Positions 20 through 63,057 of a DNA stretch of 64,000 bases are shown here, piece after piece. The notes beneath the pieces were generated by a model that was not told the DNA's origin, did no database searches, and saw only the letters and a list, made by a program, of their open reading frames with translations. The position numbers and the translations under genes were made by a program. The stretch's first letter is position 1; each line of letters opens with the position of its first letter. The DNA is from Octopus sinensis (taxonomy: Eukaryota): the NCBI RefSeq assembly GCF_006345805.1, contig NC_043015.1:45756001-45820000 (forward strand). The letters run 5' to 3'.

Positions 20-230
20 TGTGTCTGTGTTTGTCCCCCTAGCATTGCTTGACAACCGATGCTGGTGTGTTTATGTCCCCGTTACTTAGCGGTTCGGTAT
101 TAGAGACCGATAGAATAAGTACTGGGCTTACAAAAGAATAAGTCCTGGGGTCGAGTTGCTCGATTAAAGGTGGTGCTCCAGCATGGCCGCAGTCAAATGA
201 CTGAAACAAGTAAAAGAGTAAAGAGAGAGT
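20..230 (+). mobile_element. SINE family A, 3' half
   Basis: ccctagcattgcttgacaaccgatgctgg...gactgaaacaagtaaaagag, shared with ~20 copies in the window. Confidence 0.85.
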
Positions 231-361: not shown

Positions 362-536
362 GAAAGAAAAGAAAATATGGAGCCTAATGTAGAATGTCAA
401 GGCCAATCAGTTTCTGGTACTCGAACATGTCGCGCACGTCGATCAATCAACTACAAATTTACTGAGTTTGACGAGCTTATTGACAGCGCTATCCAGGACG
501 ATATGAAAAACGCGAAAGATGCTTCGGCTGCAGAAT
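362..536 (+). CDS. RSF1: RSF1-like internal coding exon (first in window)
   Basis: Acceptor ttttttag at 354-361, donor GTAAGC at 537. Translates ERKENMEPNVECQGQSVSGTRTCRARRSINYKFTEFDELIDSAIQDDMKNAKDASAAE, matching the RSF1 motif R-x-R-x-x-I-x-Y-x-F-x-E-F-D-E-x-I-D-x-A-I-x-D-D (recalled human RSF1: RTRKCISYRFDEFDEAIDEAIEDD). Ends in phase 1. Confidence 0.88.
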
Positions 537-1960: not shown

Positions 1961-2276
1961 GTAATGAAGATGAAGAGTCACATAGTGGTAAAGACATGTC
2001 GAACTTCAGCTCACGGGAAGCTCCTGTCAGCAAGGGCAAAGACATGGACACTATAATGACAGTGTATAGTGAAAGCAATGACCTTCGACCCCAAGGAATC
2101 CAAGCCAAAAAGGAAGCTGGTCGTCGCCGAGGAAAGGACATCTCTAATCTCGTGGGTAAAGGAAGCGACAGCGACGAACAGTATCCTGCACCTCGCAAAA
2201 GGCGGCCTAGGAGAAAGCTAACCACTCTAGACAGTGACAGTTACGGCTCCGATAGTGAAGAGTACAAAGCTTCCGA
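1961..2276 (+). CDS. RSF1: RSF1-like coding exon with GKD(M/I) repeats
   Basis: ttattttcag acceptor, GTAAGT donor at 2277. Phase 1 in (T+GT=Cys), phase 2 out. Encodes GKDMSNF...GKDMDTI...GKDISNL...RKRRPRRKLTTLDSDS...EEYKASE, comparable to RSF1 GKDIST...RRKKRRRLNDLDSDS...EDEFKISD. Confidence 0.9.
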
Positions 2277-3810: not shown

Positions 3811-4973
3811 AGAATATTTCTTCATAGTAGCTGGACATGTTTTTATGGATGACTGGAAATGTGGGACTACTTGTATGATGTCGACATTCATTTATGATTC
3901 TTTCTAAATCACAAGGATCTGTATGGATGCTGTTTAGTCCAATTTCTCTTATAATTAATTGGTTGAGTGATAAATCTCACCAAAAACAGGACTCCGGTTT
4001 GTTGCCTTGGGGCATAACTTACAAAATAAACACAGCACTGCAAGTCAGTAAAGTATATATTTATTAGTTCTACAGTGTTGAGGCTTACGTTATTAAATTC
4101 TGTCACTCATGGTTCCTGTTTTGAGCTAAGTAGACTGAGGCATTGAGAGTGGAAGGTCTTGGCCATAGACACAATAAGCATTGTGAAATACTGATTGTTT
4201 GATACCCTGTTGTCATCTCCAACCATATCTTTCTGACAAACCTCTACTATGTAAAGACGAAGGTGTCTCTATGTGGTCGCTTACCTTGCTGGAAATAGCA
4301 GCTAAATCTCCAAATTACATGTAGTTGTTTAGAAACAAAGGTGTATATTAGATAATGTTTTCCTGAATGGCGCAGGAGTGGCTGTGTGGTAAGTAGCTTG
4401 CTAACCAACTACATGGTTGCGGGTTTAGTCCCACTGCGTGGAATCTTGGGCAAGTGTCTTCTGCTATAGCCCCGGGCCGACCAATGCCTTGTGAGTGGAT
4501 TAGGTAGACAGAAACTGAAAGAAGCCTGTCGTATATATGTATATATATATATGTATGTGTGTGTGTGTGTGTCTGTGTTTGTCCCCCTAGCATTGCTTGA
4601 CAACCGATGCTGGTATGTTTACGTCCCTGTCACTTAGTGGTTCAGCAAAAGAGACTGATAGAATAAGTACTGGGCTTACAAAGAATAAGTCCCGGGGTCG
4701 ATTTTCTCGACTAAAGGCGGTGCTCCAGCATGGCCACAGGCAAATGACTGAAACAAGTAAAAGAGTAAAGAGAATGTGTAATGTGTTGAGCAAAATCAGA
4801 TTGATTATAGATCTGCTCGTTCATAGTTGTCTTTGAGCTAATCAGCTAATTCGATCCCAGATGGAGCAGGCCACTCCTCATCCGAACAAAGGCTCACCTA
4901 AAAGATTAAGAACCTTATTCAAAAGATGTATTGGAGTATTGCATGTTATTTTTTTTTTTGAATTTGTTTTTAG

Positions 4974-5173
4974 GGAATCTGACCCTTCTGTTGAAGATCT
5001 TGATCTGAGTGATTATTCAGAGGAAGAGGAAGATGACGACGATGACGATGATGAAGACTATGGTACCAGGCGTCGATCGACTCGCTCAACAACCAGACAG
5101 AATACCCGTGCCAGTCAAAAGTCATCGAGAGTTCATGCACGGAGAAGCCGGCGACGTAACTTTGATGACTTCG
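4974..5173 (+). CDS. RSF1: RSF1-like acidic/basic coding exon
   Basis: ttttag acceptor at 4968-4973, GTAAAA donor at 5174. Phase 2 in (GA+G=Glu), phase 1 out. Encodes ESDPSVEDLDLSDYSEEEEDDDD...RRSTRSTTRQ...RRRNFDDF. Confidence 0.88.
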
Positions 5174-6900: not shown

Positions 6901-9900
6901 TGGTTGACGATGATTATGACTCTGATGACAGTGGGAATTACCGTAGGTCCACGAGAGCATCGGTGAAGCGCAAAGTTAACTACCGCGAGAAATTCAGCGA
7001 CGAGGAGGAGGAAATGACACCGTCTGAGGAAAGCGAAGCGAACAGCGAAGATTTCTCTGACCTCGCGTCCGACGACAGCGTGAAACCGAACAAGAAGCTA
7101 AAACTTAAACTGGAGAAAAAGAAACTCAAGAAGTCGAAACGAGTGATTCGCAAAAACTTCTCTGACGACGACGACGATGACGATGACGTCGATGATAAAG
7201 CAGACGATGGGATAAATGACGAAGAAGACACTGACAGAGGCAGTAAGAAGAAGAAGAGGAAGAGCCAACAGCAGTTTTCATCTTCCCATGACAACAGTGC
7301 TGAGAGCGATGATGAGCTGAAGAGCAAGAAGAAAGCTGGTAGGAAGAGGCGTCTGGCTGTCAGCGACAGCGATTCTTCTTCTTCATCTTCTTCTTCGAGC
7401 ACTCGGTCGCAGAACCGGGTCCGCCGCTCCCACCGCTCTTCAACGCTGAAAGTGAATTTTAAGAAGCTGCTAGATTCAGATTCCGAAGAAGATTCTGGAA
7501 ACATCGAGCGAAAATACATTCTCAGCAAACTTAAAAAGAACACCATTGTGTCCGACTCCGACTCCATCGCGTCGGACGATAAGTCGAGCATAAAGAACGA
7601 TGACGACGATGACGAGGGCGGTGGTCGTGAGAATAAAGATAGCGGCAGTAACAGAATGGACATTGATGATGTTGGGGTGGAGGCTAAAAAGGAGGGCAAG
7701 CCTGTCGGCAACAGAAATGCGGATGCGGTTATGAAACCTGCAACAGCAGCAGTACCACCACCACCAACAACAACAGCAGCAATGCTAACAACACCAACAG
7801 CAACAACAACAGCTGCACCACCACCATCAACAACAACAACAACAAAAATGACCACAGCGACATCACTACCACCAACAGTAACACCAACAACTGTGGAAAA
7901 ACCAACACCTGCAGTAAAAGCAACAGCGGCAGCAGCAGAGAAAACTGCATCGGTTGCACCTGTAAAAAAAGTTGCACAAGCTGCAGAAAAAGAAGCAACT
8001 GCAGCACCTGCAAAATCTCATGCAGCAGTACCTGAAAAAGCTGCTGCAGCAGCAATACCTGCAGAAAAATCTGCTGCAGTGTCGGAAAAAACTGATACAG
8101 CAACACCTGCAAAAACCGCTCCAGATGTACAAACTGCGAAAACTACTCCAGTAGTAAAAACTGATACAGAAACACCTGTGAAAACACCTGCTACAAAAAC
8201 TGATACAGCAGCATCGGGAAAAACTGCTTCAGTAGCACCTGCGAAAACAGATATGGCAGCATCAGCAAAAACAGCTTCAGTGGCACCGATGAAGACTGAT
8301 ACAACAGCATCAGTGAAAACAGATCCTTCTGTGCCAGTAAAAGCTGATAGTATAGCAGCATCATCAAAATCTGCGAAGGCAGCACCTGTAAAAACTGTTT
8401 CGGGAACACCTGGAAAAACCGCTTGTGCAGCACCAGAAAATGCAGATGCAGTAATACCTGCAAAAATTGCTAAAACATCTCTTTCAGAAACTGATTCAGC
8501 TACACCTGCAAAAACTGCAAAATTAGCACCTGCAAAAGCATCTGCGTCATCACCTGTGAAAGCACCTGGGAAAACTGATGCTGCAGCTCCAGTTAAATCT
8601 GATACTGCGGCGCCTACCAAAATTGACACAGCAGCAAAAGCTGTTTCAGCGCCATCTACAAAGTCATCTGCAGCCACTCCTGCAAAAACACCAACTGCTA
8701 CCAATGCAAAATCAACTGCAGACACACCTTCCAAATCAGCTGCAGACACACCTGCAAAATCCGCTGCAGACACACCTGCAAAATCAGCTGTAGCCACACC
8801 TGCAAAGTTAGCTGTAACTACTCCTGCAAAAGCAGCTGCAGATTCACCTGCAAAGGAATCTGCAGACTCATCTGCAAAAACGGTTGCTGCCATGCCTGCA
8901 AAAACAGTTTCAGAACCGCGTGCAAAAACAATTTCAGATACACCTCCGAAAACAGTTTCAGATTCGCCTGTGAAAACAGTTACAGATTCAACTGCGAAAA
9001 AGGCTGCAGCCACTCCTGCAAAAACGCCTGCAGACTCACCTGCGAAAACAACTGCAACGACACCTGCAAAAACAAGTGCAACCACACCTGCAAAAACAGG
9101 TGCAAACACACCTGCAAAAACAAGTGCAACCACACCTGCAAAAACAGCTTCAGACTCACCTGCAAAAACAGCTGTATCTACACCTGCAAAGACAGCTGCA
9201 GATTCTTCTGCAAAAACTGCAATTTTTCCTGCAAAAACTGCTGTCTTTCCTGCAAAAAGTGCAGTCTTTCCTGCAAAAAGTGCAGTCTTTCCTGCAAAAA
9301 GTGCGGTCTTTCCTGCAAAAAGTGCAGTCTTTCCTGCAAAAAGTGCAGTTTTTCCTGCAAAAACAGCTGCATCCACACCTTCAAAAACAGCTTCAGGGTC
9401 ACCTGCGAAATCAGCTGTATCTACACCTGCAAAGACAGCTGCAGATTCATCTGCAAAAACAGTTTCATCTACATCTGCAAAGACAACTGCAGATTCATCT
9501 GCAAAAACAGGTGCATCTACATCTTCGAAAACAGGTTCAGCCACTCCTGTGAAAGCAGCTTCAGACTCCTCTGCAAAGGCAGTTTCAGATTCACCCACAA
9601 AAACAGTTGCAAAGACAAGTGCGGATTCATCTGCAAAAACAGCTGCATCTACACCTGCAAAGACATCTGCAGATTCATCTGCAAAAACAGGTGCATCCAC
9701 ATCTGCAAAGACATCTGCAGATTCATCTACGAAAACAGGTGCATCCACATCTGCAAAGACACCTGCAGATTCATCTACACCTTCAAAAACAAGTGCAACC
9801 ACACCTGCTAAAGCAGCTTCAGACTCATCTGCCAAAAAACCTGCAGCCATATTTCCGAAAACATCTGCAAAGACTGCTGCAGATTCATCTGCAAAAACAG

Positions 9901-10987
9901 GCACACCTGCAAAGTCAGCTGCAGATTCATTGCAAAAACAGGCACACCTGCAAAGACAGCTGCAGATTCATCTGCAAAAACAGGCACACCTGCAAAGTCA
10001 GCTGCAGATTCATCTGCAAAAACAGGCACACCTGCAAAGACAGCTGCAGATTCATCTGCAAAAACAGCTCCATTCACAGCTTCGAAAATAGGTGCAGCCA
10101 CTCCTACAAAAACAGCTGTATCAGTAAAAAATACTTCAACAACCTCTGAAAAAACTGCTGCAGGGGCAACAACAGCAAAATCCTCAGTGTCAGAAAAAAC
10201 ACCTGCAGCATCGTCATCAAAAACAGCTTCTTCATCAACACCAGTGAAGAAACCACCGACAGAAGGGACCAAAGCTGCCACAACTGTATCAGCAGCAGTA
10301 ACAACATCTGCATCAGCACCAAAAAAAACAAGTGCAACTACGGCATCATCAACAACAACAACAACAACAACAACAAAAACAGCGGCTGTAGCATCGTCAT
10401 CAACAACTAAAGATTCAGCAGCAAAAACTCCAGTAAAGACACCTGTAACGACAAGTTCCTCCACTCCCGCCAACACTAAGAGCACGAGCAGCAGCAGTAG
10501 TAGCAGTACTGCGTCCAAGAACAGCTCCAACATCACTACCAATGTAACATCTACGACGACGACCACCACCAGCAGTAGTAGTAGCAGCAGCAGCAGCAGC
10601 AGCAGCACACCCTCTACCAACTCCACCTCAGTCACCTCGAATACAACAAGCACATCGTCCAGCGAAACATCAGTTTCAAATACAGAGGTCCGACCGAGCG
10701 ACAGCAGCAGTAGTAGTAGTAGCAGCGGCAGCAGCAACAGCTGCAGCAGCACGGTGAACAGTAGTTCGTTTAGCCAAATGAACGGTCACGACAATCAGAA
10801 GGCTGGCCAAAAGGACAGGCTTTTGGAAAAAGCGGAAACTCGGACTATTCCTGTCGACCAGCCACAGCAGCGAGACGATAGCTTAGGCAATGAGCAAATA
10901 AGTGGTCAAGATGACCCGTCGTTACACGTGGTGGGCAGCTCTACCAGCCGGTCTGGACCTCAGGTAGCCAACGTTTTAAAACCCTAA
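6901..10987 (+). CDS. RSF1: RSF1-like terminal coding exon (acidic/basic region plus ~1000-aa A/K/T/S/P low-complexity tail); 1-bp deletion at ~9930
   Basis: tctatttcag acceptor, phase 1 in (G+TG=Val). RRSTRASVKRKVNYRE resembles RSF1 RRSRRNQKRQINYKE. As assembled, the frame stops at 10091. Restoring the missing C in gcagattcat(c)tgca joins it, without stops, to the ORF ending ...NVLKP* at 10987. Confidence 0.8.
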
Positions 10988-12383: not shown

Positions 12384-13459
12384 CCCTTTCGTTACTATAT
12401 TTCTGACCAAAATACACCCCTTATGTGTTTCAATTAATTTCTAACATAATCATAAATTTAGTCTGGTTTCATTAAACAACTATAACTTTTTTATTTATCA
12501 ATATATTAATGTGATTTTTGGAAGATAATTTAATGAAATGTTCTCAACCAATTCTATACTATAATTTTTGTCACAAAGTGACTCTAATTGCAGGTAGATA
12601 CAGGTAAATTCAACAAAATATAAAATTATTAAAATTTTGTTCAAACATCGCTATAGAAAATGGGTTATTAGCTAATATTCAATTGGGTATACAACAAAAT
12701 TTTACGATAGAATGTTATTCTGGGTAACTTTCTGATACCCATAATAATATTTATGGCAAAATAGTCTTAATTTCATTTAAGGTTGTGGGAAACCACTAAC
12801 TATTTTTTCTTTTGCTTTGTTTACATTTAGCGTAACGGTTCGTTTCCGCCGTAATGAGTTCAAATAGACTTATCGGAAAAAGTAAAAAGAAATAGTCTAT
12901 CACTTTACTCTCCTGGGAAAGTCTGTGGCTTGGTCCAGTTTCTTCAGAAAAATCACCGAAAGAAACAGTTTTTAAATTTTCACTCCATTCAGGTGCCAAT
13001 TCATTTTCTTTATCGCTGTCGGAGCTCTCGGATTCACTGTTTTCACTTTCGGAAAATGAAACATCGGATTCATTATCAAATACCACGTGCTTTTTTTTTT
13101 TCAGTCATAGAGTTAGATTTATCAAGGTCTTCAGTAGAAAATCCTTCGAATTCTGACTCGTTGCTTGATATAATGAAATTCGTATCCATTTTTTGTCAGA
13201 ATTACAAATTTTGAAAACACAATAGGAACAAATTTTGGAAAAAAATCTCCCATAATTCACGGAATTAAAATTACACTTCGATCGTTGTACAAAACTGTAG
13301 ATGAACTGTTTACGAAGTATAATCACATGTTTTCACGAATGTACTAAAGAGATTTGCTCTGATATTCTCATTTAAATATGAATAGGTAAATATGGGCGGT
13401 TTGGTCACATTAACCAAAATTTTTTTCGGGTGGCTTTGGGCAGTTTGGTAACGAAAGGG
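12384..13459 (-). mobile_element. Non-autonomous piggyBac with N-terminal transposase remnant
   Basis: TTAA at 12380-83 and 13460-63; TIR CCCTTTCGTTAC / GTAACGAAAGGG. Minus ORF from ATG 13189 (one poly-A frameshift) gives MDTNFIISSNESEFEGFS...FSEETGPSHRL...DYFFLLFPISLFELITAETNRYA, a typical PGBD N-terminal motif. Confidence 0.88.
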
Positions 13460-13752: not shown

Positions 13753-14039
13753 TTAAAGTGATTTACTATGAGTAAATGAAAGTCTCTCTATGCTGTCACT
13801 TGACTGGCATGCTAGAATTAGCAGCCAGGCCTCCCTCAGACCATATCTCCATTTTGAATATAGAATCATATAGCTGCAGGCATGGCTCTGTGGTTAATAA
13901 GTTTGCTTTCCAACCACATGGTTTTGGGTTCAGTCCCATTGTGTGGAACCTTGGGCAAATATCTTCTACTATAGCTCCAGGCCAACCAAAGTTTTGTGAG
14001 TGGATTCGGTAGATGGAAACTGAAAGAAGCCTGTCATTT

Positions 14040-14112
14040 GTGTCTGTATGTATGTGGGTATATATATATGTGTGTATATATGTATGTATGTGTGTGTGTA
14101 TGTATGTATATA

Positions 14113-14167
<55 letters not shown>

Positions 14168-14236
14168 GTATGTGTGTATATGTCTATGTATGTGTGTGCG
14201 TGTATATGTATGTATGTGTGTGTATGTATGTATATA

Positions 14237-14291
<55 letters not shown>

Positions 14292-14352
14292 GTATGTGTG
14301 TATATGTCTATGTATGTGTGTGCGTGTATATGTATGTATGTGTGTGTGTATG
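14040..14352. repeat. Compound (TA)/(TG)/(TATG) microsatellite, internally duplicated, inside a SINE A
   Basis: Direct inspection; two near-identical ~130-bp microsatellite blocks in tandem. Confidence 0.85.
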
Positions 14353-14837
14353 CAAGGGGTCATGCAGTGGGATTGATCCTGGAACCATGTGGTTGGGAAG
14401 CAAACTTCTTACTACACAATTTCAACACACGAGGCTAAACAGGCAAGTATTTTCTCATGGTTAAGTGACAGGGCAGAGTCAAAGGTTACTTCTGAGGTAA
14501 CTTCAGGATTCTTTCTGTTTTACTCGTATTCTCCCCACACACTGTACGTTGTCCTTGCTGTGCCTTCTTAAAAGAAGGGAGGTAACTCTCTTACTATATC
14601 GCTGACATACCAGCAAGGGAAAGTTCTCTCTTTTACTCTTTTACTTGGTTCAGTCATTTGACTGCGGCCATGCTGGAGCATCGCCTTTAGTCCAGGAAAT
14701 CGACCCCCAGGACTTATTCTTTGTAAGCCTAATACTTATTCTATCGGTCTCTTTTGCCAAACCGCTAAGTTACGGGGACGTAAACACATCAACATCGGTT
14801 GTCAAGCGATGTTGTGGGGACAAACACAGACACATAA

Positions 14838-17554: not shown

Positions 17555-18889
17555 AAAGTAAACACATAAATGTGAAACAAAGTGGGAAAAAATAGTACTT
17601 GAATACCGGAGGTCGAGTCAGAAGTTTTTTGTGATGTTTTTGCAGTTTTAATAATAATAAAGTATATATAATATATATATGTAATGTTATAATATATACA
17701 TTATTGACTGGTTGATAATGTTTACAGCATATAGGCGCAGGAGTGGCTGTGTGGTAAGAAGTTTGCTAATCAACCACATGGTTCCGGGTTCAGTCCCACT
17801 GGGTGGTATCTTGGGCAAGTGTCTTCTGCTATAGCCTCGGGCGACCAAAGCCTTGTGAGTGGATTTGGTAGACGGAAACTGAAAGAAGCTTGTCGTATAT
17901 ATGTATATATATGTGTGTGTGTGTGTGTGTCTGTGTTTGTCCCCCTAGTATTGCTTGACAACCGATGCTGGTGTGTTTATGTCCCCGTTACTTAGCGGTT
18001 CGGCAAAAGAGACCAATAGAATAAGTACTGGGCTTACAAAAGAATAAGTCCCGGGGTTGAGTTGCTCGATTAAAGACAGTGCTCCAGCATGGCCGCAGTC
18101 AAATGACTGAAACAAGTAAAAGAGTATAATATATATATGTAATGTTATAATATATACATTACTGACCAGTTGATAATGTTTACAGCAGCAGCACTGGTTG
18201 TAATTCATAGTTGGGGTTAATCTCTTGGAAGCATTGTTGTGGCATGCCGGGCAAATGGGTTTTACACTATTTATATATCGGCATAGACTGGTTCGATTCT
18301 GGTATGTCATGTTGATATGACACAAAAATGTCAATGGGATTAGGAGTGGGTTGTTTTGCCTGTTTATGACTTGAGGTATTTTAACACCCAGCGCTTTGAG
18401 GGAGCCATCCCCACTGTGCCACTCTGCAGTATACTGGCAAACAGACAAAACATATGTGAAGAATCTGCAATTGATAATGTTTGTGCTACTTCTAAATTAT
18501 AAAATCCTTAAATCCTTCAAAATGTTTTAGCCCAAAGGCCGCGGCCATGCTGGGGCACCACCGCTGGAGTGAGAGAAAGTTGTGGCAAAAGAGTCAGCAG
18601 AAGTTCGCCATTACTCTCTGCCGGAGCCGTGTGGTGCTTAGGTGTTTTGCTCATAAATGCACACCTCGCCTGGTCTGAGATTCGAACCTGCGATCCCTTG
18701 ACTGCGAGTCCGCTACTCTAACCACTAGGCTATAAACGCACATACATACATACAAATGGCGGTGCCCCAGCATGTCCACAGTTCATGAGCTGAAACCAGT
18801 TCAATTCAATACATACACACATATGGCTGTTGAGACAAGGGAGGTAATCGTAATATGTGAAGCAAGATTAGAAATTTGGATTTGAAATC

Positions 18890-20216: not shown

Positions 20217-21821
20217 TATATATACACATACATACACACACAATGTAAATATTAAAATTGAGTTTAAGCTGTAATTTGACGGTAATTTTGAGTGTATTGA
20301 AGATAATGTCTTCTCCATTGGGATTGGACCACAAACTTGATGGATGGGAAAACTTGGTTACCATCACACTGGAGGGACAGCATTAATATTTGTTCATAGT
20401 AATTAAATGCTAATTATCTGTTTTGATATAGATTTTATTCTGTTTATTCTGGCAGACGTTAACCCTTTAGTGTTCAGATTACTCTGTTAAACGTAATACT
20501 TTTTCACTCAAATTGTTTTTAATTAATCCTGCATTATCTTATAGCTTTGAGGTTTCAATGATGTGATTGTTCATTTTTAGAATGTCATTGTAGGTTAGGT
20601 GTGAGAGGCCTGATCTGGTCAGTTTAAACATAAAATAGGTAGAAAACTTTGGCCGGATATGGCCAGTTTAAACACTGAAGGGTTAAACAATGATGATGAT
20701 GATGATGATGATTCTGAGCTATTAAGGATTTTTATTTTTGCAGAAAATGAGGGCAGGCAATAGCTATGTTGTGAAGTTGTTCTGTTTTGCAGCTATGTGT
20801 TTCTGGTGGATGACAACCACCCAACCCTGGATGTGGCTAAAAAGCCACAACAAAACCTGTTTGCCATTTTGGCAAGTCAGACCTGCATGACACCACAATT
20901 TGAATGGTACTGATGATCCTGTGTTGAAGGACTTAAGATTGAATACTACCCAGTTGATGCAGAAGGTGGGGAGGCCTCACATCAGTGAGTAAGGGGGGTG
21001 CATAGGTGCTGCAAAGCAGTTGAAGTGAAGGGCCCAAAGTGGTATGCATTCTCCCTGAACACCTCCACCCCCCACCTGCCGGAAATGTACTGGTGTCCAA
21101 TATGTGAAGTTCTTGATTGACAGCACTGGAACATACTCTTTTACTTGTTTCTGTCATTTGACTGCGGCCATGCTGGAGCACCGCCTTTAATTGAGCAACT
21201 CAACCCCGGGACTTATTCTTTTGTAAGCCCAGTACTTATTCTATCGGTCTCTTTGCCAAACCGCTAAGTAACGGGGACATAAACACACCAGCATCGGTTG
21301 TCAAGCAATGCTAGGGGGACAAACACAGACACACAAATACACACACGCATATATATATATATATATATACATATATACGACAGGCTTCTTTCAGTTTCCG
21401 TCTACCAAATCCACTCACAAGGCTTTGGTCGGCCCGAGGCTATAGTAGAAGACACTTGCCCAAGGTGCCACGTAGTGGGACTGAACCCGGAACCATGTGG
21501 TTGGTAAACAAGCTACTTACCACACTGCCACTCCTGCGCAAGTTGTTTGCAAGTCCCATATTGTTTTGTTTGCTTGTTTAATGCAAATTTTTCCATGTTT
21601 GCATAGCTGGGTCAGAAAGCTGGATTTTTATGGTTGGATGTACGATGCTAGTCACCAACCTTCAACTGTTTTACAGCTAAGGGTCTTTGTTTATTTTTGA
21701 AAAAATTTTATTCTACAGGTCTTCAAAAACACAGAGCAGTATGTCAGTAAGACATGTCAACATCTTTTCACTCAAAAAGTGTCAAGCAAAATGCCAACAG
21801 TCACGCAAATGTACTAGCATA

Positions 21822-22260
21822 TACATACACACACACACGCATACATACATACATACATACATACATACATACATACATACATACATACATACATACATAC
21901 ATACATACATACATACATACATACATACATACATACATACATACATACATACATACATACAACATACATACATATACATACATACATACAACATACATAC
22001 ATACATACATACATACATACATACATACATACATACATACATGCATACATGCATGCATACACACATGCATACACACATGCATACATACATACACACACAT
22101 ACATACAAACATACATACATATATACATACATACATACATATAAATATATACATACATACACACACACATACACACATACATACATACACATATATACAT
22201 ACACACATACATACATACACGTGTAGATACATACGTACATACATACATATATACATATTC
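21822..22260. repeat. (CATA)n microsatellite
   Basis: Direct inspection. Similar tracts at 32630-32980, 44740-45240 and 47050-47340. Confidence 0.95.
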
Positions 22261-22794
22261 TGTTATTCTTTTATTTGATTCAGTTATTTGACTGTGGCCA
22301 TACTGAAGCACTGCCTTTAGTTGAACAAATCAATCCCAGGACATATTCTTTGTAAGCCTAGTACTTATTCTATCAGTCTCTTTTGCCAAACCGCTAAGTT
22401 ACGGGGACATAAATACACTAACATTGGTTGTCAACACAGACACCCAAACATATGCATACACACACACACACATATATATATAATATCAAAGGGTAAAATT
22501 AATTAATTAAGAAGTAATCAATAATTTCACCAAGTAGAATTCGGTATGAAAAAGGGACCATTTCAGAGTAAACTTAAGTAATACTTGATAATTAGGGTTC
22601 AGCAAAAATTTGCTTTACCACATACTGAAGTTTAGAAATAGCGGCCAAAACGTTAGCTATTTCTTCTACTTTAAAAAGGGACTCCCAGAGAAACCAAGCT
22701 AAGGTTTTGGCTGCTATTTCTAAACTTTGGTATGTGCTAAAGCAAATCTTTGCTGAACTCTAATTATTAAGTATATATATATATATATATAAAT

Positions 22795-32343: not shown

Positions 32344-32904
32344 AGAAGTTTGCTTCCCAGTCACATGTCTTCTGGCTCAGTTCTACTGCATGGCACCTTG
32401 GGCAAGTCTCTTCTACTATAGACTCTGGCCGACCAGAGCCTTTTGAGAGGATTTGATGATTGGTTAGGCAAAAAGAGACCAATAGAATCAGTGCCAGTCT
32501 TAAAAAAAAAAGTCCTGGATCAACTTGTTCAATCAAAACCCTTCAAGGTGGTGCCCCAGCATGGCCACAGTCAAATTTCTGAAACAAGTAAAAGAGGTGT
32601 ACGTGTAAATGTATCCTTCCATCCATGTATACACACCTGTATGTACATATGTATGTATGTGTATGTATGTGTGTGTATGTGTGTGTATGTGCTTATGTAT
32701 GTATGCATGTGTATATGTATGTGTGTGTGTATGCAGGCATGTATGTATGTGTGTGTGCGTGAGTGAGTATGTATGTATGTGTGTATGTATGTGTGTGCAT
32801 GTGTGTATGCATGTATATATGTATGTATGTATATATGTGTGTTTTTGTATGTATGTATGCATGTATGGATGTGTGTATACGTGTATGTATATGTATGTAT
32901 GTGC

Positions 32905-32937
<33 letters not shown>

Positions 32938-34989
32938 TGTATGTATGTGTGCATGTGCGTTCGTGGGTATGTGTAAACATACATGTGTATTTGTTTATTC
33001 AGCTGATGACACTTTAAAAAAAAAACAAGAATAAATCGTGTTCCGTATACATTTCTGTCCATTTTCGTTGTTTAGATTTGGCTTTGAGCCAACAATATCC
33101 TGTTTGTTATTATATAACAACGGATGCTAAACCACAGAATAAGGCAAACTCAACTTTCAATATATTAATTTCACCCAGCCATATTTTGTGGTGGTTGTAA
33201 TATACTGGCCACCACTTCTATAGATCAGTTGGAACATCCGAACCGTCAGTCCTGGACCTTATCTGTAGCATAACTGATAACCTCACTGTTTGAGAGAACA
33301 TATTAGGAATGATCTTGTGTGAGATAACAACCATCTTTGGCTAATTTGACCCTGTTGTGTCCACTGCTCTGATTGATTGGTATTTGGCACAGTTTGTCTT
33401 TGGACTTATTCGCGCCAGTGTGTAAGCCAACCAATCATGGCCTTTGGATAAGGTCTTGTGACACAGTTTTTCTGATGCCCTGTTTGAGCCACCTTAACCC
33501 TAAAAAAAGGCCAGCATTCATTATTCCTGGTCTTTGGCTCTAGACCTTCTAAGGTCTAGTCACTGACCACCGAGCTACTCAACCATGTTCCAGTTCCAGC
33601 AACAGATGACCAGCCAGCCAGCCAGCTATGCTCCTGCTCCAGCAATGACGATACTAACTTACACCAGCGACAGGCAGGATGTTCTCCATCTCCACTGCCA
33701 TCATCACCATCATCATCCTTCAACTCTCCATCATCTCAATCTCAGTCGACTTCAACAATATATACACATCAACTCTGTCCAGGTTTAAACTCCATACTGT
33801 TGTGAATATTTCATTGAGGTAAAACAGCTACAGTCTACCTGAAAGAACTTCCTGTATCAAGAGACTCGGCACGGCATTGAAGTCACAAACCGCTGCACAA
33901 TATGTGCCCAACCGGCATTCTGCTTCATGACCCCAACATCTTGTTATAGAACTATTGCTATTATGTACCTCACTTACGAACTGGTAAACAAATTCCATCT
34001 TAACTCAATATGCTGAGAGACTTATCATATTGCTCTGTATTCTGTTTTATACACATACACTTTCTGTCACACACACGAACACACAGACACAAACACCTAT
34101 GCACATGCATTCAGACACTACACCTTTGCTAGCACCCATACTTTCTCTTTGTACACTTTGTAAATAAAGTCTTCTTCTCTCTCAAACAGTAGAATGGTTG
34201 TTGTCCTCATTTATTCCTTTTGGCACTGTATTTTATATCATGTATTTGGTTTCTTATTTTGTTAGGGGCGACCGTGCGGCGTTTTAAAGGAGACATTTGT
34301 CACCAACTCCTTATGTACGGTTGTATTCCCTACATATCTATCAGATATGGAGCTGATATACGCGTTCTCAGATTTCCTCATGAAGAAGCTCAATATATGA
34401 AAAGGATGTAGCATATACTCTAGTGAAATTCCTTTCCCCTTTATTATATGTATGGACATACGAACGCAGAAGATAGCAGCTAGCCTTTGGCTGTTATTTG
34501 AACTTTGTTGTCTCCACTACTCTGATTGGTTGGTATTGGCGAAATTTGTCTCTTGTTCTGCTGCGCCAATATGCAGCATATAACCAATCAGAGCCCCTAA
34601 ATAAGATCACGTGAAATAGCCTTTTCTCAACCCCGTTTGAACCTACTGTTCATTATAAAAACTCACCTTCTCCTTGTCTCAAGGTCTTTGGTTCTAGACC
34701 TTTCAAGGTCTAGCCACTGACCACATGAGACCCAGTCAGTTCCAGCGACAATGCCAGACAACAACACCCGTCCTACAGCAAAATGCCTAGGTTTCAATGC
34801 AGCACTGTTCGCGAATTACTTCACCATGGTTCAACAGAAAAGATACAACCTGCAAGCCAGACGACAGCACCCGTCCAACAGCATTACAGCAATCTCTTTC
34901 TTTGTCGCCACCATCTTCTTCTTAATGATGTCAACACCATCTCTCTAAGTACACATTAATATTAAAACATTAATATTAAAGTTGGGAAT

Positions 34990-35720
34990 CTACTTGGTTT
35001 TTGTATGCCTTGGCTTTTATCCAATTAATCCTTAATGCTTGATCTTGTGCAGCTATTTACAAACTTTCTGTTTCCCCTTTCTGCAACCATAACCATGTCT
35101 CACTACTACTGTTTGCCACAACTATCTTTGGGAATCTGCCATGCAATGCCTTCTTCCGCCTGTCAGATAACTTCTGTTCTTTTTTCTGGTTTTTAATTTT
35201 GTTTGGGTTTTTGATTCCCTTATGTTTTGCTGTGTCTCTAGCAGATTTTAATAAACTTTCTTCACTATTACCTACATACGAGTCTATATCTACTCTAGCT
35301 AACTCCACACAGTCTTCTACTGATATTAACCCTCTTCTGCCTTCCTTTCTAGGTAAGTATAATCTTGCTACTCCTACCCCTGTGCAGAGTCTTCCTTTCA
35401 TATTGGATTCCTTCCCAGTTCTTCTATCTAGCTTTGCTGATTCAGTTTTTGCCCAATCTACAAAAGCTGCTGAGTATCTAAGTAATGATACTGCCCAAGT
35501 ATTTACAGCCTTCACTAGATTCCAACCATTTGGCTTTGACTTCATTAGCTTCCTCACCATTCTGATGTACTCCTTATCAATTTTCGTTTTCATTTCTATA
35601 GTTAGTACTCTGTCATATTCTAATACTCCTAGATACTTATAACTCTCTCCAAGCTTTCAATGATTTTAATGTCTGGTTGTCTGGTATTTGAATGCCTTCA
35701 CAGTTGACTGCATTGTAATT
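34990..35720 (-). mobile_element. R4/Dong-clade non-LTR retrotransposon fragment
   Basis: SYKYLGVLE...KEYIRMVRKLMKSK.NGWNLVKAVNTWAVSLLRYS...RLYLPRKEGRRGLISVED...ETESL*IAAQDQAL, typical of R4-group RT/RLE elements. Confidence 0.8.
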
Positions 35721-36305: not shown

Positions 36306-36713
36306 CCACAGAGATATAATATTAATCTTTCATTGCTGACAAATGATTTGGTGACTTTTTTCAGATAACATCAACTACTACAAGTTTCTAAAAAAAAACC
36401 CAGTTATCTCTAAAATATCTTTCGAGGCTGAGATCACCAGTTTATTTAAGATACTGTATATTGTTTTTGTTTTGTCAGATACCGGTTGGGTCCCAAAATT
36501 TGTTTTGCTAAAATTAAACAGCGTAATTACCTCTTGTGGTTGAGTAGTTTATAACTATTATGTCACACCTGATGAGTTCCGTAGCATAACCGATACATGC
36601 TGTCCATGTTGTCCAATACCGTTTGCAGCTGTTTAACTTAATACTTTTTTGAGAAATACAAGAAGAAATGTCACAGCTCCCTTTCTATAATCTCTTTTAG
36701 GTATTGATGGAGC

Positions 36714-39700
36714 AGGCCTAATGTCAAAAGGCCAGGCTTAAGGTCGAAAGGCCAGGTTTAAGTCAAAAGGCCAGGCTTAAGGTCAAAAGGCCAGGCTTAA
36801 GGTCGAAAGGCCAGGTTTAAAGTCAAAAGGCCAGGCTTAAGGTCAAAAGGCCAGGCTTAAGGTCAAAAGGCCAGGCTTAAGGTCAAAAGGCCAGGCTTAA
36901 GGTCAAAAGGCCAGGCTTAAGGTCAAAAGGCCAGGCTTAAGGTCAAAAGGCCAGGCCTAAGGTCAAAAGGCCAGGCTTAAGGTCAAAAGGCCAGGCTTAA
37001 GGTCAAAAGGCCAGACTTAAGGTCAAAAGGCCAGACTTAAGGTGAAAAGGCCAGGCTTAAGGTGAAAAGGCCAGGCTTAAGGTGAAAAGGCCAGGCTTAA
37101 GGTGAAAAGGCCAGGCTTAAGGTGAAAAGGCCAGGCTTAAGGTGAAAAGGCCAGGCTTAAGGTCAAAATGCCAGGCTTAAGGTGAAAAGGCCAGGCTTAA
37201 GGTGAAAAGGCCAGGCTTAAGGTGAAAAGGCCAGGCTTAAGGTGAAAAGGCCAGGCTTAAGGTGAAAAGGCCAGCTTAAGGTCAAAAGGCCAGGCTTAAG
37301 GTCAAATGGCCAGCTTAAGGTGAAAAGGCCAGGCTTAAGGTGAAAAGGCCAGGCTTAAGGTGAAAAGGCCAGGCTTAAGGTGAAAAGGCCAGGCTTAAGG
37401 TGAAAAGGCCAGGCTTAAGGTCAAAAGGCCAGGCTTAAGGTCAAAATGCCAGGCTTAAGGTAAAAGGCCAGGCTTAAGGTCAAAAGGCCAGGCTTAAGGT
37501 CAAATGCCAGGCTTAAGGTGAAAAGGCCAGGCTTAAGGTGAAAAGGCCAGGCTTAAGGTGAAAAGGCCAGGCTTAAGGTGAAAAGGCCAGGCTTAAGGTG
37601 AAAAGGCCAGGCTTAAGGTCAAAATGCCAGGCTTAAGGTGAAAAGGCCAGGCTTAAGGGAAAAAGCCAGGCTTAAGGTGAAAAGGCCAGGCTTAAGGTGA
37701 AAAGGCCAGGCTTAAGGCAAATGCCAGGCTTAAGGTGAAAAGGCCAGGCTTAAGGTCAAAAGGCCAGGCTTAAGGTGAAAAGGCCAGGCTTAAGGTGAAA
37801 AGGCCAGGCTTAAGGTGAAAAGGCCAGGCTTAAGGTCAAATGCCAGGCTTAAGGTGAAAAGGCCAGCTTAAGGTCAAAAGGCCAGGCTTAAGGTGAAAAG
37901 GCCAGGCTTAAGGTGAAAAGGCCAGGCTTAAGGTCAAAATGCCAGGCTTAAGGTGAAAAGGCCAGACTTAAGGTCAAAAGGCCAGGCTTAAGGTGAAAAG
38001 GCCAGGCTTAAGGTGAAAAGGCCAGGCTTAAGGTGAAAAGGCCAGGCTTAAGGTGAAAAGCCAGACTTAAGGTCAAAAGGCCAGGCTTAGGTGAAAAGCC
38101 AGGCTTAAGGTGAAAAGGCCAGGCTTAAGGTCAAAATGCCAGGCTTAAGGTGAAAAGGCCAGACTTAAGGTCAAAAGGCCAGCTTAAGGTGAAAAGGCCA
38201 GGCTTAAGGTGAAAAGGCCAGGCTTAAGGTGAAAAGGCCAGGCTTAAGTCAAAATGCCAGGCCTTAAGGTGAAAAAGGCCAACTTAAGGTGAAAAGGCCA
38301 GGCTTAAGGTGAAAAGGCCAGGCTTAAGGTGAAAAGGCCAGGCTTAGGTGAAAAGGCCAGCTTAAGGTCAAAAGGCCAGGCTTAAGGTGAAAAGGCCAGG
38401 CTTAAGGTGAAAAGGCCAGGCTTAAGGTGAAAAGGCCAGGCTTAAGGTGAAAAGGCCAGGCTTAAGGTCAAAAGGCCAGCTTAAGGTCAAAAGGCCAGGC
38501 TTAAGGTGAAAAGGCCAGGCTTAAGGTGAAAAGGCCAGGCTTAAGGTCAAAAGGCCAGGCTTAAGGTGAAAAGGCCAGCTTAAGGTGAAAAAGGCCATCT
38601 TAAGGTGAAAAGGCCAGACTTAAGGTCAAAAGGCCAGGCTTAAGGTGAAAAGGCCAGGCTTAAGGTGAAAAGGCCAGGCTTAAGGTCAAAATGCCAGGCT
38701 TAAGGTGAAAAGGCCAGACTTAAGGTCAAAAGCCAGGCTTAAGGTGAAAAGGCCAGGCTTAAGGTGAAAAGGCCAGGCTTAAGGTGAAAAGGCCAGGCTT
38801 AAGGTGAAAATGCCAGGCTTAAGGTCACAAATGCAGGCTTAAGGTGAAAAGGCCAGGCTTAAGGTGAAAATGCCAGGCTTAAGGTCAAAATGCCAGGCTT
38901 AAGGTGAAAAGGCCAGGCTTAAGGTCAAAAGGCCAGGCTTAAGGTCAAAAGGCCAGGCTTAAGGTCAAAAGGCCAGGCTTAAGGTGAAAAGGCCAGGCTT
39001 AAGGTCAAAATGCCAGGCTTAAGGTGAAAAGGCCAGACTTAAGGTCAAAAGGCCAGGCTTAAGGTGAAAAGGCCAGGCTTAAGGTGAAAAGGCCAGGCTT
39101 AAGGTGAAAAGGCCAGGCTTAAGGTCCAAATGCCAGGCTTAAGGTGAAAAGGCCAGACTTAAGGTCAAAAGGCCAGGCTTAAGGTGAAAAGGCCAGGCTT
39201 AAGGTGAAAAGGCAGGCTTAAGGTGAAAAGGCCAGGCTTAGGTGAAAAGGCCAGGCTTAAGGTGAAAAGGCCAGGCTTAAGGTCAAAAGGCCAGGCTTAA
39301 GGTGAAAAAGGCCAGGCTAAGGTCAAAATGCCAGGCTTAAGGTGAAAAGGCCAGGCTTAAGGTGAAAAGGCCAGGCTTAAGGTCAAAATGCCAGGCTTAA
39401 GGTGAAAAGGCAGGCTTAAGGTGAAAAGGCCAGGCTTAAGGTGAAAAGGCCAGGCTTAAGGTCAAAAGGCCAGGCTTAAGGTGAAAAGGCCAGGCTTAAG
39501 GTGAAAAGGCCAGGCTTAAGGTGAAAAGGCCAGCTTAGGTGAAAAGGCCAGGCTTAAGGTGAAAAGGCCAGGCTTAAGGTGAAAAGGCCAGGCTTAAGGT
39601 GAAAAGGCCAGGCTTAAGGTCAAAAGGCCAGGCTTAAGGTGAAAAGGCCAGGCTTAAGGTGAAAAGGCCAGCTTAGGTGAAAAGGCCAGGCTTAAGGTGA

Positions 39701-42700: not shown

Positions 42701-43494
42701 TAAGTGAAAAGGCCAGGCCTTAAGGTGAAAAGGCCAGGCTTAAGGTGAAAAGGCCAGGCTTAAGGTCAAAAGGCCAGGCTTAAGGTGAAAAGGCCAGGCT
42801 TAAGGTGAAAAGGCCAGGCTTAAGGTCAAAATGCCAGGCTTAAGGTGAAAGGCCAGGCTTAAGGTCAAAAGGCCAGGCTTAGGTCAAAAGGCCAGGCTTA
42901 AGGTGAAAATGCCAGGCTTAAGGTCAAAAGGCCAGGCTTAAGGTCAAAAGGCCAGGCTTAAGGTGAAAAGGCCAGGCTTAAGGTCAAAAGGCCAGGCTTA
43001 AGGTCAAAAGGCCAGGCTTAAGGTGAAAAGGCCAGGCTTAAGGTCAAAAGGCCAGGCTTAAGGTCAAAAGGCCAGGCTTAAGGTGAAAATGCCAGCTTAA
43101 GGTCAAAAGGCCAGGCTTAAGGTCAAAAGGCCAGGCTTAAGGTGAAAAGGCCAGGCTTAAGGTGAAAAGGCCAGGCTTAAGGTCAAAAGGCCAGGCTTAA
43201 GGTCAAAAGGCCAGGCTTAAGGTGAAAAGGCCAGGCTTAAGGTGAAAAGGCCAGGCTTAAGGTGAAAATGCCAGGCTTAAGGTCAAAAGGCCAGGCTTAA
43301 GGTCAAAAGGCCAGGCTTAAGGTGAAAAGGCCAGGCTTAAGGTGAAAAGGCCAGGCTTAAGGTGAAAAGGCCAGGCTTAAGGTGAAAAGGCCAGGCTTAA
43401 GGTCAAAATGCCAGGCTTAAGGTCAAAATGCCAGGCTTAAGGTCAAAAGGCCAGGCTTAAGGTCAAAATGCCAGGCTTAAAAGGTCAAAAGGCC
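36714..43494. repeat. 6.8-kb satellite of a 20-bp unit (GGCCAGGCTTAAGGT[C/G]AAAA), ~340 copies
   Basis: Direct inspection. Copy number is length/20. Main variants: GTC vs GTG and AAAAG vs AAAAT. Confidence 0.97.
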
Positions 43495-46189: not shown

Positions 46190-47344
46190 ATATATACACA
46201 TATATATAATACAAATAAGAAAGTGGAGAAACAATTTAGTAGGTTCATCAGCTTTCGGATATTAGAATGTTGACTTATGGTAAAATATTTCTTTACCTTC
46301 ACCCATTTAATACAATAAATAAGTTAATTGCATTGCAATTAAAAACATTTGTGTATTAAGAATTTGGGTATTATACCAACAGTATATTGGATAAATATTA
46401 TCCCTTAATGGGTTGGATCCATAACCCCTAACTTACTTGGTGTTATATATATAAAGGTGCAGGCGTGGCAAGTAGCTTGTGTACAAACCACATGGTTCCG
46501 GGTTCAGTCCCACAGCATGGTACCTTTGGCAAGTGTCTTCTACTATAACCTCAGGCCGACCAAAGCCTTGTGAGTGGATTTATATTAACTCAATACATCT
46601 GACTAATATAGGCAGAATGAGATACCTTTATCTACAGGCTGAAACAGCTGTAAGGTCCATTCTATGTGTGTTATTTTTATGGTATTATCTTACTTATTGA
46701 TGTATATTGTTTTATTTTGTTGGATTTAGACGTTCCTATTTATGTAGTTAATAAATAATATGACTTGGTAATATCTGTAAGTCGATGATTGAAAGGAATC
46801 TGTTCCTCCATTTTCTTATTTATATTATTTACTATCTATCATTTTGCTTTATATGTATACACACACACATTGACAAAAGTAGCATTAATTTTCTTAGGTC
46901 GTTCAATTTACCCCAATTGATCAACAGACCAATATAGTAAACCTATTAATAATGTACCTATAAAAATGTACCTATAAAATGTACCTATAAAAATTTGCTC
47001 TAATAAAGAAATTATATGCAATGACCAGTATTTTTAACTTGCATCTTATACGTATGTATGTATGTATGTATGTATGTATGTATGTATGTATGTATGTATG
47101 TATGCATGTTTGGATGGATGTATGTATGTATGTATGTATGTATGTATGCATGTTTGGATGTATGTATGTATGTATGTATGTATGTATGTATGTATGTATG
47201 TATGTATGTATGTATGTTTGGATGGATGGATGGATGGATGTATGTATGTATGCATACTTGTATGTATGTACGTATAGATGGATGGATGTATGTATGTATG
47301 GATGGATGGATGGATGTATGTATGTGTGTATGTATGTATGGGAA

Positions 47345-62988: not shown

Positions 62989-63057
<69 letters not shown>

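What the first reader, a model, noticed from the sequence alone, without database searches (positions are those of the whole stretch)
7730..10790. RSF1 carries a ~1000-residue histone-H1-like tail with >30 S/T-P-x-K motifs
After the recognisable RSF1 acidic/basic region, the terminal exon encodes an A/K/T/S/P repeat (TPAK, SPAK, TPVK, TPSK; >30 by hand count). S/T-P-x-K is both the CDK consensus site and the minor-groove DNA-binding motif of H1 and sperm-histone tails. I do not recall such a tail in vertebrate RSF1. A chromatin-remodeller subunit fused to a cell-cycle-switchable linker-histone-like disordered domain would be a lineage-specific innovation.
Basis: partly seen in the sequence, partly recalled or inferred. 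Interest (0 to 1): 0.72.

Follow-up and report, generated by a model that had tools for sequence, protein, structure and literature searches.

The report
Repeat-expanded disordered tail inside RSF1 exon
The last large exon of a mollusc-type RSF1 chromatin-remodeller gene holds a roughly 1,000-residue expansion of an eight-residue Thr/Ser-Pro-Ala-Lys repeat that a related species lacks; it is real and lineage-specific, but it is too weakly charged to be histone-H1-like, and the assembly interrupts it with a one-base frameshift.

Summary
The repeat is real. The + strand of 7731-10750 encodes an A/T/S/K/P tract built mostly of 8-residue units ([TS]-x-x-x-[TS]-[PS]-A-K, 24-nt period). It has 37 S/T-P-x-K motifs, against about 3-4 expected from composition.

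It is not one open frame as assembled. One C is missing at about 9930, inside a 5 x 42-nt near-identical sub-array. This shifts the frame from 0 to 2, so the assembled ORF stops at 10091.

Both flanks of the shift are open only in their own frame. The frame-2 C-terminal block (10763-10978) is conserved with an orthologous locus, L001 (57% identity, dN/dS about 0.2). I therefore infer that the tract is translated and that the frameshift is an assembly error or a very recent allele.

The gene is RSF1-like. Its spliced exons match named mollusc and mite RSF1 proteins just after their PHD finger.

L001 goes from the same acidic/basic region to the same C-terminal block with only about 30 T-rich residues between them. 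Six other RSF1 relatives also lack the tract, so it is a lineage-specific insertion.

"H1-like" is not supported. Lysine is 13% (about 40% in an H1 C-terminal domain), net charge is +0.06 per residue, there are no SPKK-type motifs, and the Ser/Thr before Pro is not kept in the older units.

My reading is a slippage-expanded disordered spacer that may be a multi-site proline-directed kinase substrate. Interest is moderate to low.

The parts
362..536 (+). RSF1 exon 'a' (inferred AG/GT borders). It encodes ...TRTCRARRSINYKFTEFDELIDSAIQDD..., the conserved motif that follows the PHD finger in RSF1 relatives.
   Evidence: Splice sites and frame. Matches P0006, P0010, P0002 and P0004.
1961..2276 (+). 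RSF1 exon 'b' (GKDMD.../RRRGKDISNLVG...RKLTTLDSDS...).
   Evidence: 80% nt identity to L001 582-830. tblastn hits of P0008 and P0003.
4974..5173 (+). RSF1 exon 'c' (acidic run, then basic RRRSTRSTTRQN...RRSRRRNFDDF). The junction with the next exon recreates the conserved 'DFVVDD.Y.S'.
6901..7730 (+). Start of the large 3' exon: alternating acidic and basic region, frame 0, pI 5.1. It is 74% identical to P0001.
7731..7901 (+). A/T/P-rich lead-in (poly-Thr/Ala/Pro). It resembles the short T-rich tract that is all L001 has at this position.
7902..8702 (+). Older, degenerate octapeptide units (x-x-x-x-x-P-x-K). Frame 0 has 0 stops; the other two frames have 18 and 13 stops over 7731-8700.
8703..10118 (+). 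Regular 24/48-nt array ([TS]xxx[TS][PS]AK). It includes two young sub-arrays: 9208-9363 (21 nt x 7.4, 'SAVFPAK', 94% matches) and 9861-10067 (42 nt x 5, 95% matches). It holds most of the S/T-P-x-K motifs.
9929..9932 (+). One-base deletion (a C lost: TCATCTGC becomes TCATTGC) in unit 2 of the 42-nt sub-array. The reading frame shifts from 0 to 2.
10119..10762 (+). Distal part of the tract in frame 2. K-periodic units fade into poly-Thr/poly-Ser. Frame 2 is the only open frame over 9932-10984 (the other frames have 14 and 17 stops).
10763..10987 (+). Conserved C-terminal block in frame 2 (SSFSQMNGHDN...STSRSGPQVANVL) and stop codon at 10985-10987.
   Evidence: 57% identity to P0001 residues 269-333, E 6e-19. 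69% nt identity to L001. dN 0.21 and dS 1.07.

Best explanation
The tract is an in-exon coding minisatellite. A 24-nt unit encoding the octapeptide [TS]-x-x-x-[TS]-[PS]-A-K expanded by replication slippage or unequal exchange. It has higher-order 48/72/132-nt blocks and young 21-nt and 42-nt sub-arrays. The expansion happened inside the short Thr/Ser-rich disordered linker that lies between the acidic/basic region and a conserved C-terminal block of the large 3' exon of an RSF1 orthologue.

It is translated (inferred) as a roughly 1,000-residue, intrinsically disordered, polar, only weakly basic spacer (pI about 10, +0.06 net charge per residue). The one-base frameshift at about 9930 is most likely an assembly or sequencing error, or a very recent allele.

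The likeliest biochemical behaviour (inferred, not shown) is a long flexible spacer carrying about 37 proline-directed kinase (CDK/MAPK) consensus sites. Full phosphorylation would cancel or invert its small net positive charge (about +64 to about -10). The tract sits next to RSF1's own acidic histone-binding tracts. This logic is closer to the acidic-tract plus [ST]PxK[KA] N-terminus of nucleolin, or to sea-urchin sperm-histone SPKK arms, than to a somatic H1 tail. Much of the expansion may be nearly neutral.
For: Shown:
- Every tandem-repeat period reported is a multiple of 3 (12, 18, 21, 24, 27, 30, 36, 42, 45, 48, 72, 102, 132). The one exception is the 83-nt period that spans the deletion.
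- Frame 0 has 0 stops in 1008 codons (6903-9929), while the other frames have 18 and 13 stops in 7731-8700. Frame 2 has 0 stops in 351 codons (9932-10984), while the other frames have 14 and 17.
- The deletion is a single missing base in one of five near-identical units.
- The downstream frame-2 block is conserved with L001 at dN/dS of about 0.2. It has therefore been translated, which requires reading through the tract or skipping it in frame.
- Among 58 clean 24-nt units, second codon positions are the least variable (C in xCx codons) and Lys is invariant.
- L001/P0001 has the same exon with no tract.
- RSF1 identity.
- Disorder: AlphaFold2 gives mean pLDDT 38.8 and no secondary structure. 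Pfam finds no domain.
- Charge figures.

From the literature:
- CDK consensus, and the argument that phosphorylation matters when sites are many relative to charge: PMC2504289.
- Nucleolin architecture: PMC9064852.
Against: - I had no transcript, proteomic or read-level data, so translation and the status of the frameshift are inferred.
- Repeat sequence keeps all three frames nearly open in 8701-9929 (5 and 1 stops), so ORF evidence is weak in the most regular part.
- Only one close orthologue was available, and synonymous sites are saturated against it. The age and taxonomic spread of the tract are therefore unknown, and loss in the L001 lineage cannot be excluded.
- S/T is not conserved before P-x-K in the older units, which weakens any kinase-site function.
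- The AlphaFold2 run used a single sequence.
Confidence: 0.6

Rival explanations
1. One reading: the tract is a linker-histone-like DNA-binding tail. Its S/T-P-x-K motifs bind the minor groove and are switched off by CDK1 in mitosis, giving RSF1 a built-in, cell-cycle-controlled H1-like module.
For: There are 37 matches to (S/T)-P-X-(K/R) (consensus as in PMC2504289). The composition is A/K/P/S/T-rich, pI is about 10, and the tract is disordered. RSF1 is a chromatin protein. Dreissena RSF1 carries SPRK and two TPKK(K)RGRK AT-hook-like motifs at the equivalent position, so basic DNA-contact motifs in this linker have some precedent.
Against: Lysine is 13%, against about 40% in an H1 C-terminal domain. 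Net charge is +0.064 per residue, and many units (SAADTPAK, TAADSSAK) are neutral. There are no [ST]P[KR][KR] motifs. There is no linker-histone domain. S/T precedes only 6 of 18 P-x-K in the older units, and P is replaced by S in about a third of the younger units.
Confidence: 0.1
2. The tract is not part of the mature protein. It is spliced out (an intron or exitron nested in the exon), or the gene copy is broken by the frameshift, so the protein ends at 10091 or the locus is decaying.
For: The assembly really does contain a frameshift. The repeat has many CTGCAG-type acceptor-like sites. The orthologue works without the tract. No expression data were available.
Against: Frame 0 stays open through 323 degenerate codons (7731-8700) where the other frames have 18 and 13 stops. 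Frame 2 stays open through 351 codons after the shift where the other frames have 14 and 17 stops. By a rough Poisson estimate each has a chance of about 1e-6 to 1e-7. All repeat periods are multiples of 3. The C-terminal block is under purifying selection. Only one base is out of register, and it lies in the youngest sub-array (95-97% identical units), where errors are most likely.
Confidence: 0.15
3. The tract is translated but acts mainly as a heavily O-glycosylated (O-GlcNAc) or otherwise modified Thr/Ser-rich polar brush, a mucin-like PTS-type domain inside the nucleus, rather than as a kinase substrate.
For: T+S make up 32% of the proximal part and up to 47-78% of the distal part, together with P and A in short tandem units. 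This is the composition of PTS/mucin-type repeats (my own knowledge).
Against: RSF1 relatives are nuclear proteins with no sign of secretion. The regular Lys every 8 residues is not typical of mucin repeats. Nothing here tests glycosylation.
Confidence: 0.1

Closest known systems
RSF1 (remodeling and spacing factor 1, partner of SNF2H) of other invertebrates, e.g. Dreissena polymorpha KAH3811913.1 (P0006) and Dinothrombium tinctorium RWS07504.1 (P0010)
   Same: The conserved post-PHD motifs appear in the same order: RKERLAFV..SLDNIL (seen in L002), CR..R.I.Y.F.E[FY]DELI..AI..D, SRGKDMSNI, DFVVD..Y.S. A long acidic/basic region follows, and then a lineage-specific low-complexity extension.
   Different: Their extensions are P/Q/G/H/Y-rich or K/E-rich, with 0-7 S/T-P-x-K motifs and no octapeptide array. 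They end in GFMMDNIL...DLVSYVTQ, which I could not find in the window or in L001.
Nucleolin N-terminal disordered domain
   Same: Acidic Asp/Glu tracts lie next to repeated [ST]PxK[KA] motifs that proline-directed kinases (CDK1) phosphorylate, in a histone-interacting nuclear protein (PMC9064852).
   Different: Nucleolin has 8 motifs, mostly TPxKK with two lysines, interleaved with the acidic tracts. Here there are 37 motifs with a single Lys, in one block of about 1,000 residues. There are no RRM or RGG domains. The proteins are not homologous.
Histone H1 C-terminal domain
   Same: It is disordered, A/K/P/S/T-rich and contains (S/T)-P-X-(K/R) CDK sites (PMC2504289).
   Different: The H1 domain has about 40 lysines per 100 residues, almost no acidic residues and only 3-5 CDK sites. 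The tract has 13% Lys, 6% Asp+Glu and net charge +0.064 per residue. There is no winged-helix globular domain.
Sea-urchin sperm H1/H2B N-terminal SPKK arrays
   Same: Many tandem S-P-containing basic motifs, where full phosphorylation could cancel the net charge (discussed in PMC2504289).
   Different: Those motifs are S-P-[KR]-[KR], and none occurs here. Their charge density is far higher and the arrays are tens of residues long, not about 1,000.
Phospho-repeat tails such as neurofilament-H/M KSP repeats, RNA polymerase II CTD and Spt5 CTR (from my own knowledge)
   Same: Long tandem arrays of short S/T-P-containing units that form disordered, multi-site proline-directed kinase substrates or spacers.
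   Different: The unit sequence and the host protein differ, and there is no evidence of common descent. No phosphorylation data exist for the tract.

Membership tests
RSF1 (remodeling and spacing factor 1) | Conserved post-PHD sequence motifs in the canonical order | tested here: met
   The spliced 507-aa non-tail query hits proteins named RSF1: Dreissena P0006 (3.5e-8), Dinothrombium P0010, JGI P0008. It also hits PHD-containing P0002 (4e-14). The matches start just after their PHD finger. The c/d exon junction recreates 'DFVVDD.Y.S'. The orthologous contig has the RKERLAFVGISLDNIL exon upstream.
RSF1 (remodeling and spacing factor 1) | PHD finger and N-terminal DDT/WHIM region in the same gene | not testable with these tools
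   The window starts after these exons. The 7.6 kb of L002 upstream of the RKERLAFV exon holds no PHD exon.
RSF1 (remodeling and spacing factor 1) | Canonical C-terminal end (GFMMDNIL ... DLVSYVTQ) seen in invertebrate RSF1 | tested here: not met
   Neither a regular-expression scan nor a profile of four C-termini finds it in the window or in L001. Both loci end in STSRSGPQVAN[VI]L instead.
Linker histone H1 / H1-like tail | Winged-helix globular domain (Pfam Linker_histone) | tested here: not met
   No Pfam family at E<=1 for the tail or the non-tail parts.
Linker histone H1 / H1-like tail | Very lysine-rich C-terminal domain (about 40% Lys, almost no acidic residues) | tested here: not met
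   Lys is 12.8%, Asp+Glu 6.4%, net charge +0.064 per residue. H1 figure: 40 Lys in the C-terminal domain (PMC2504289).
SPKK minor-groove-binding motif arrays | S/T-P followed by two basic residues, repeated | tested here: not met
   The [ST]P[KR][KR] count is 0 in every part of the tract.
Multi-site CDK substrate | Full consensus (S/T)-P-X-(K/R) sites in a disordered region | tested here: met
   37 sites (31 + 6), against a shuffle mean of 3.2 + 0.8. Disorder is predicted. This is a match to a sequence motif only.
Multi-site CDK substrate | Actual phosphorylation by a CDK, cyclin or Cks docking, and cell-cycle dependence | not testable with these tools
   No experimental data were available. 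The S/T acceptor is not conserved in the older units.
Nucleolin-type N-terminal domain | Acidic tracts combined with [ST]PxK[KA] repeats, plus RRM and RGG domains | tested here: not met
   Acidic tracts and [ST]PxK repeats are present. No RRM or RGG is found. The resemblance is in architecture only.

The most novel reading that the evidence does not exclude
One cephalopod or mollusc lineage has grafted about 1,000 residues of tandem CDK-consensus octapeptides onto RSF1. The result would be a phosphorylation-controlled charge switch: about +64 unphosphorylated and net negative when fully phosphorylated. In cis, it would mask or unmask RSF1's acidic histone-binding tracts, or tune chromatin association of the RSF complex through the cell cycle. 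That would be a new regulatory module on a conserved remodeller.
Probability: 0.12. Interest if true: 0.6.

Novelty: new variant of a known kind. Interest (0 to 1): 0.35.

Why it matters
If the tract is translated, it nearly doubles the disordered C-terminal half of a conserved chromatin-remodeller subunit in one lineage. That is a clear case of how coding minisatellites build large low-complexity domains in essential nuclear proteins. It also gives a natural test of whether dense arrays of proline-directed kinase sites with low charge density do anything.

The practical points are two. The locus carries a likely assembly frameshift that will truncate or distort automatic gene models. And the H1 analogy should not be passed on without charge-density and binding data.

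Tried and rejected
- **Word-indexed protein searches.** I ran three: the non-tail region, a version stripped of low-complexity sequence, and the tail plus C-terminus. They returned only P0001 or nothing. The 8000-candidate word filter was swamped by low-complexity words. Absence of hits there says nothing about novelty.
- **Window species in the collection.** Exact look-ups of the window's own ORFs (1063 aa, 266 aa and the 94-aa exon b) found nothing on record. I could not test the frameshift in independent assemblies.
- **Metagenome scans.** A protein-pattern scan and a repeat-DNA-pattern scan both found nothing.
- **PDB by sequence.** The non-tail region gave only a chance hit. The tail matched only 'HeliScrew4' (9zem_A, E 1e-5), an artificial repeat protein from a study of random repeats. 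The match reflects a shared 8-residue [ST]P..AA periodicity and I rejected it as homology.
- **Further downstream exon.** I looked for an exon carrying the canonical RSF1 C-terminus and found none. blastn of L001 against the window shows only the four exon blocks.
- **CAG|GTAGC at 10963/10964.** It is conserved in L001 and could be a splice donor. The differences just after it are mostly third-position or conservative (GCC/GCG, AAC/AAT, GTT/ATT), and it is weaker than the gene's other donors. I treat the exon as terminal, with low certainty.
- **Identity of the L001 assembly.** ERZ21867824 could not be traced in the literature.
- **Literature.** I found no paper on RSF1 in octopus or cephalopods.
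Full report
**What is in the sequence**

On the + strand a long ORF opens at 6900 in frame 0. Up to 7730 it encodes alternating acidic and basic runs (D 17%, S 17%, K 14%, pI 5.1). From 7731 the composition changes to A 26%, T 18%, S 14%, K 13%, P 11%.

Cutting the translation after each Lys shows a very regular array. Of the 91 Lys-delimited pieces in 7731-9929, 58 are exactly 8 residues long, with consensus [TS]-A-A-D/A-[TS]-[PS]-A-K. There is also a run of seven 7-residue 'SAVFPAK' units.

Tandem Repeats Finder reports periods of 24, 48, 72 and 132 nt over 8705-10118. It also reports two young sub-arrays: 21 nt x 7.4 copies at 94% matches (9208-9363) and 42 nt x 5 copies at 95% matches (9861-10067).

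[ST]-P-x-K occurs 31 times in 7731-9929 (shuffle mean 3.2, maximum 8) and 6 more times further on.

**The frameshift**

The tract is not one ORF in this assembly. At about 9930 frame 0 turns into 'LQKQAHLQRQLQIH...' and stops at 10091. The A/K/T/S/P repeat continues in frame 2 to a stop at 10985-10987.

Laying out the five 42-nt units shows the cause. Unit 2 (9903-9943) has 41 nt, reading GATTCAT-TGC where the other four read GATTCATCTGC. The shift is therefore a single missing C in the youngest, 95-97% identical sub-array.

**Is the tract coding?**

- Frame 0 has no stop in 1008 codons (6903-9929). In the degenerate proximal part (7731-8700) the other two frames have 18 and 13 stops.
- After the shift, frame 2 has no stop in 351 codons, while the other frames have 14 and 17. 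By a rough Poisson estimate each open stretch has a chance probability of about 1e-6 to 1e-7.
- Every repeat period reported is a multiple of three, except the 83-nt period that spans the deletion.
- Among the 58 clean units, second codon positions are the least variable. They are nearly always C, giving Ala, Thr, Ser or Pro. The Lys codon is invariant.
- The last 72 residues in frame 2 (10763-10978, SSFSQMNGHDN...STSRSGPQVANVL) are 57% identical to the end of P0001 (E 6e-19). For this block dN is 0.21 and dS is 1.07.

A C-terminal block under purifying selection downstream of the tract means the ribosome has had to reach it in frame. I conclude that the tract is, or until very recently was, translated. 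The one-base shift is then an assembly error or a very recent allele. This is inference. No transcript or read data were available.

**What gene is it?**

I defined three upstream exons by AG/GT borders (362-536, 1961-2276, 4974-5173). They splice in frame into the large exon at 6901.

The spliced 507-residue non-tail protein had no Pfam or PDB match. An exhaustive HMMER search of 1.84 billion representative proteins gave nine hits. The named ones are:
- 'Remodeling and spacing factor 1' of the bivalve Dreissena polymorpha (P0006, 1990 aa);
- 'remodeling and spacing factor 1-like' of the mite Dinothrombium (P0010);
- a JGI protein named the same (P0008);
- a Batillaria (gastropod) protein (P0003).

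P0002, P0006 and P0010 have a PHD finger just upstream of the matched region, and P0003 has a weak WSD match. Motif order is collinear with these proteins. The c/d exon junction recreates the conserved 'DFVVDD.Y.S'.

The orthologous contig (L001/L002, ENA ERZ21867824) also has the small 'RKERLAFVGISLDNIL' exon upstream of exon a. The RSF1 label is therefore supported, although the PHD, DDT and WHIM exons lie outside the window.

One canonical feature is missing. I could not find the GFMMDNIL...DLVSYVTQ C-terminus of other invertebrate RSF1 proteins in the window or in L001.

**Is the tract lineage-specific?**

L001 carries the same exons. Only four exon blocks align, at 68-80% nt identity. Its large exon encodes 343 residues (P0001). 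It has the same acidic/basic region (74% identity), then about 30 T-rich residues, then the same C-terminal block. It has no octapeptide array and no S/T-P-x-K at all.

Thr-rich tracts flank the array on both sides in the window. This suggests the array grew inside that ancestral tract.

The other RSF1 relatives have different low-complexity extensions at this position (P/Q/G/H/Y-rich or K/E-rich) and 0-7 motifs each. Dreissena has SPRK and two TPKK(K)RGRK AT-hook-like motifs there.

So the tract is not a general RSF1 feature. There are limits to this conclusion:
- Synonymous sites between the window and L001 are saturated, so the two lineages are old.
- I had no closer relatives, so I cannot say how narrow the distribution is, and I cannot exclude loss in the L001 lineage.
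- The databases at hand appear to lack annotated cephalopod RSF1 proteins. I therefore cannot tell whether public gene models already include the tract.
- No tool identified the window's organism. Its nearest named relatives are molluscan.

**Is it H1-like?**

The motif matches the CDK consensus (S/T)-P-X-(K/R) as given in PMC2504289. The physical chemistry differs:
- Over the 1006 residues of 7731-10750 there are 121 K+R and 57 D+E. Net charge is +0.064 per residue and pI is about 10. An H1 C-terminal domain has 40 lysines in about 100 residues (PMC2504289).
- Many units (SAADTPAK, TAADSSAK) are electrically neutral.
- The SPKK-type motif, with two basic residues after Pro, never occurs.
- In the older proximal units P-x-K is retained 18 times, but only 6 are preceded by S/T and 9 by Ala. 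In the younger units Pro is replaced by Ser in about a third. Most S/T-P-x-K copies are therefore recent amplifications of one unit, not independently maintained sites.
- AlphaFold2 (single sequence) gives mean pLDDT 38.8 and no secondary structure, which is consistent with disorder.

**How it most likely works**

Steps shown:
- a tandem coding array is present;
- the array is absent from the orthologue;
- its frame is maintained;
- it has a weakly basic, polar composition;
- it holds 37 consensus sites.

Steps inferred:
- it expanded by slippage or unequal exchange;
- it is translated as a disordered spacer between the acidic/basic region and the C-terminal block;
- proline-directed kinases may phosphorylate it.

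The net charge is small (about +64), so phosphorylating the 37 full sites would neutralise or invert it (about -10). This is unlike somatic H1, where three phosphates barely dent 40 lysines. It is closer to the argument made for sea-urchin SPKK arms in PMC2504289, and to nucleolin's acidic-tract plus [ST]PxK[KA] N-terminus (PMC9064852). A large part of the expansion may be close to neutral.

I give 0.6 to the structural and evolutionary account. The specific H1-like switch gets about 0.1, and the non-translated or broken readings get about 0.15.

**Verdict**

The repeat and the motif count are real, and the frameshift was missed. Interest is moderate to low.

Noticed in passing
window 36713-43494: A 6.8-kb satellite: the 20-bp unit CAGGCTTAAGGTGAAAAGGC repeated about 341 times at 93% matches, strongly purine-skewed on the + strand.
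   Followed up: partly
window 39-209, 851-1021, 4587-4793, 17945-18448, 62873-63397 (all - strand): A dispersed SINE-like repeat. It gives near-identical ORF fragments ('...FQSFDCGHAGAPPLIEQLDP..SFVSPVLILSVS..EPLSNGDINTPASVVKQC'), including copies inside RSF1 introns.
   Followed up: no
window 10763-10987 and L001 10805-11032: Both RSF1 loci end in 'STSRSGPQVAN[VI]L'. They lack the 'GFMMDNIL...DLVSYVTQ' end found in bivalve, mite and other RSF1 relatives. A conserved CAG|GTAGC at 10963/10964 could be a weak splice donor to an undetected exon.
   Followed up: partly
P0006 (Dreissena RSF1) residues 1454-1545: SPRK and two TPKK(K)RGRK AT-hook-like motifs lie at the position equivalent to the tract. 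A short basic S/T-P-K-K cluster in this linker may predate the expansion.
   Followed up: no
window 47058-47678 (+): An ORF with three C2H2-like zinc fingers downstream of a (TG/CA)-type microsatellite. All Pfam matches are below their cut-offs. It may be a transposon or gene fragment.
   Followed up: partly
window 12796-13086 (-) and 35057-35593 (-): These ORFs looked by eye like a piggyBac-type transposase N-terminus ('...DYFFLLFP...LITAETNRYA') and a reverse-transcriptase tail. Neither has a Pfam match, so both remain unconfirmed.
   Followed up: partly
window 14013-14464, 21687-22311, 32571-33062, 44662-45360, 47012-47410: Long (TG)n / (ACAT)n-type microsatellite tracts that give spurious Cys/Met/Val/Tyr or His/Thr/Tyr/Ile ORFs on both strands.
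   Followed up: no
window 8018-9904 (-): A 628-aa mirror ORF ('...VFAGKTALFAGKTALFAG...') runs antisense to the repeat. It is a by-product of the low-complexity array, not a gene.
   Followed up: no
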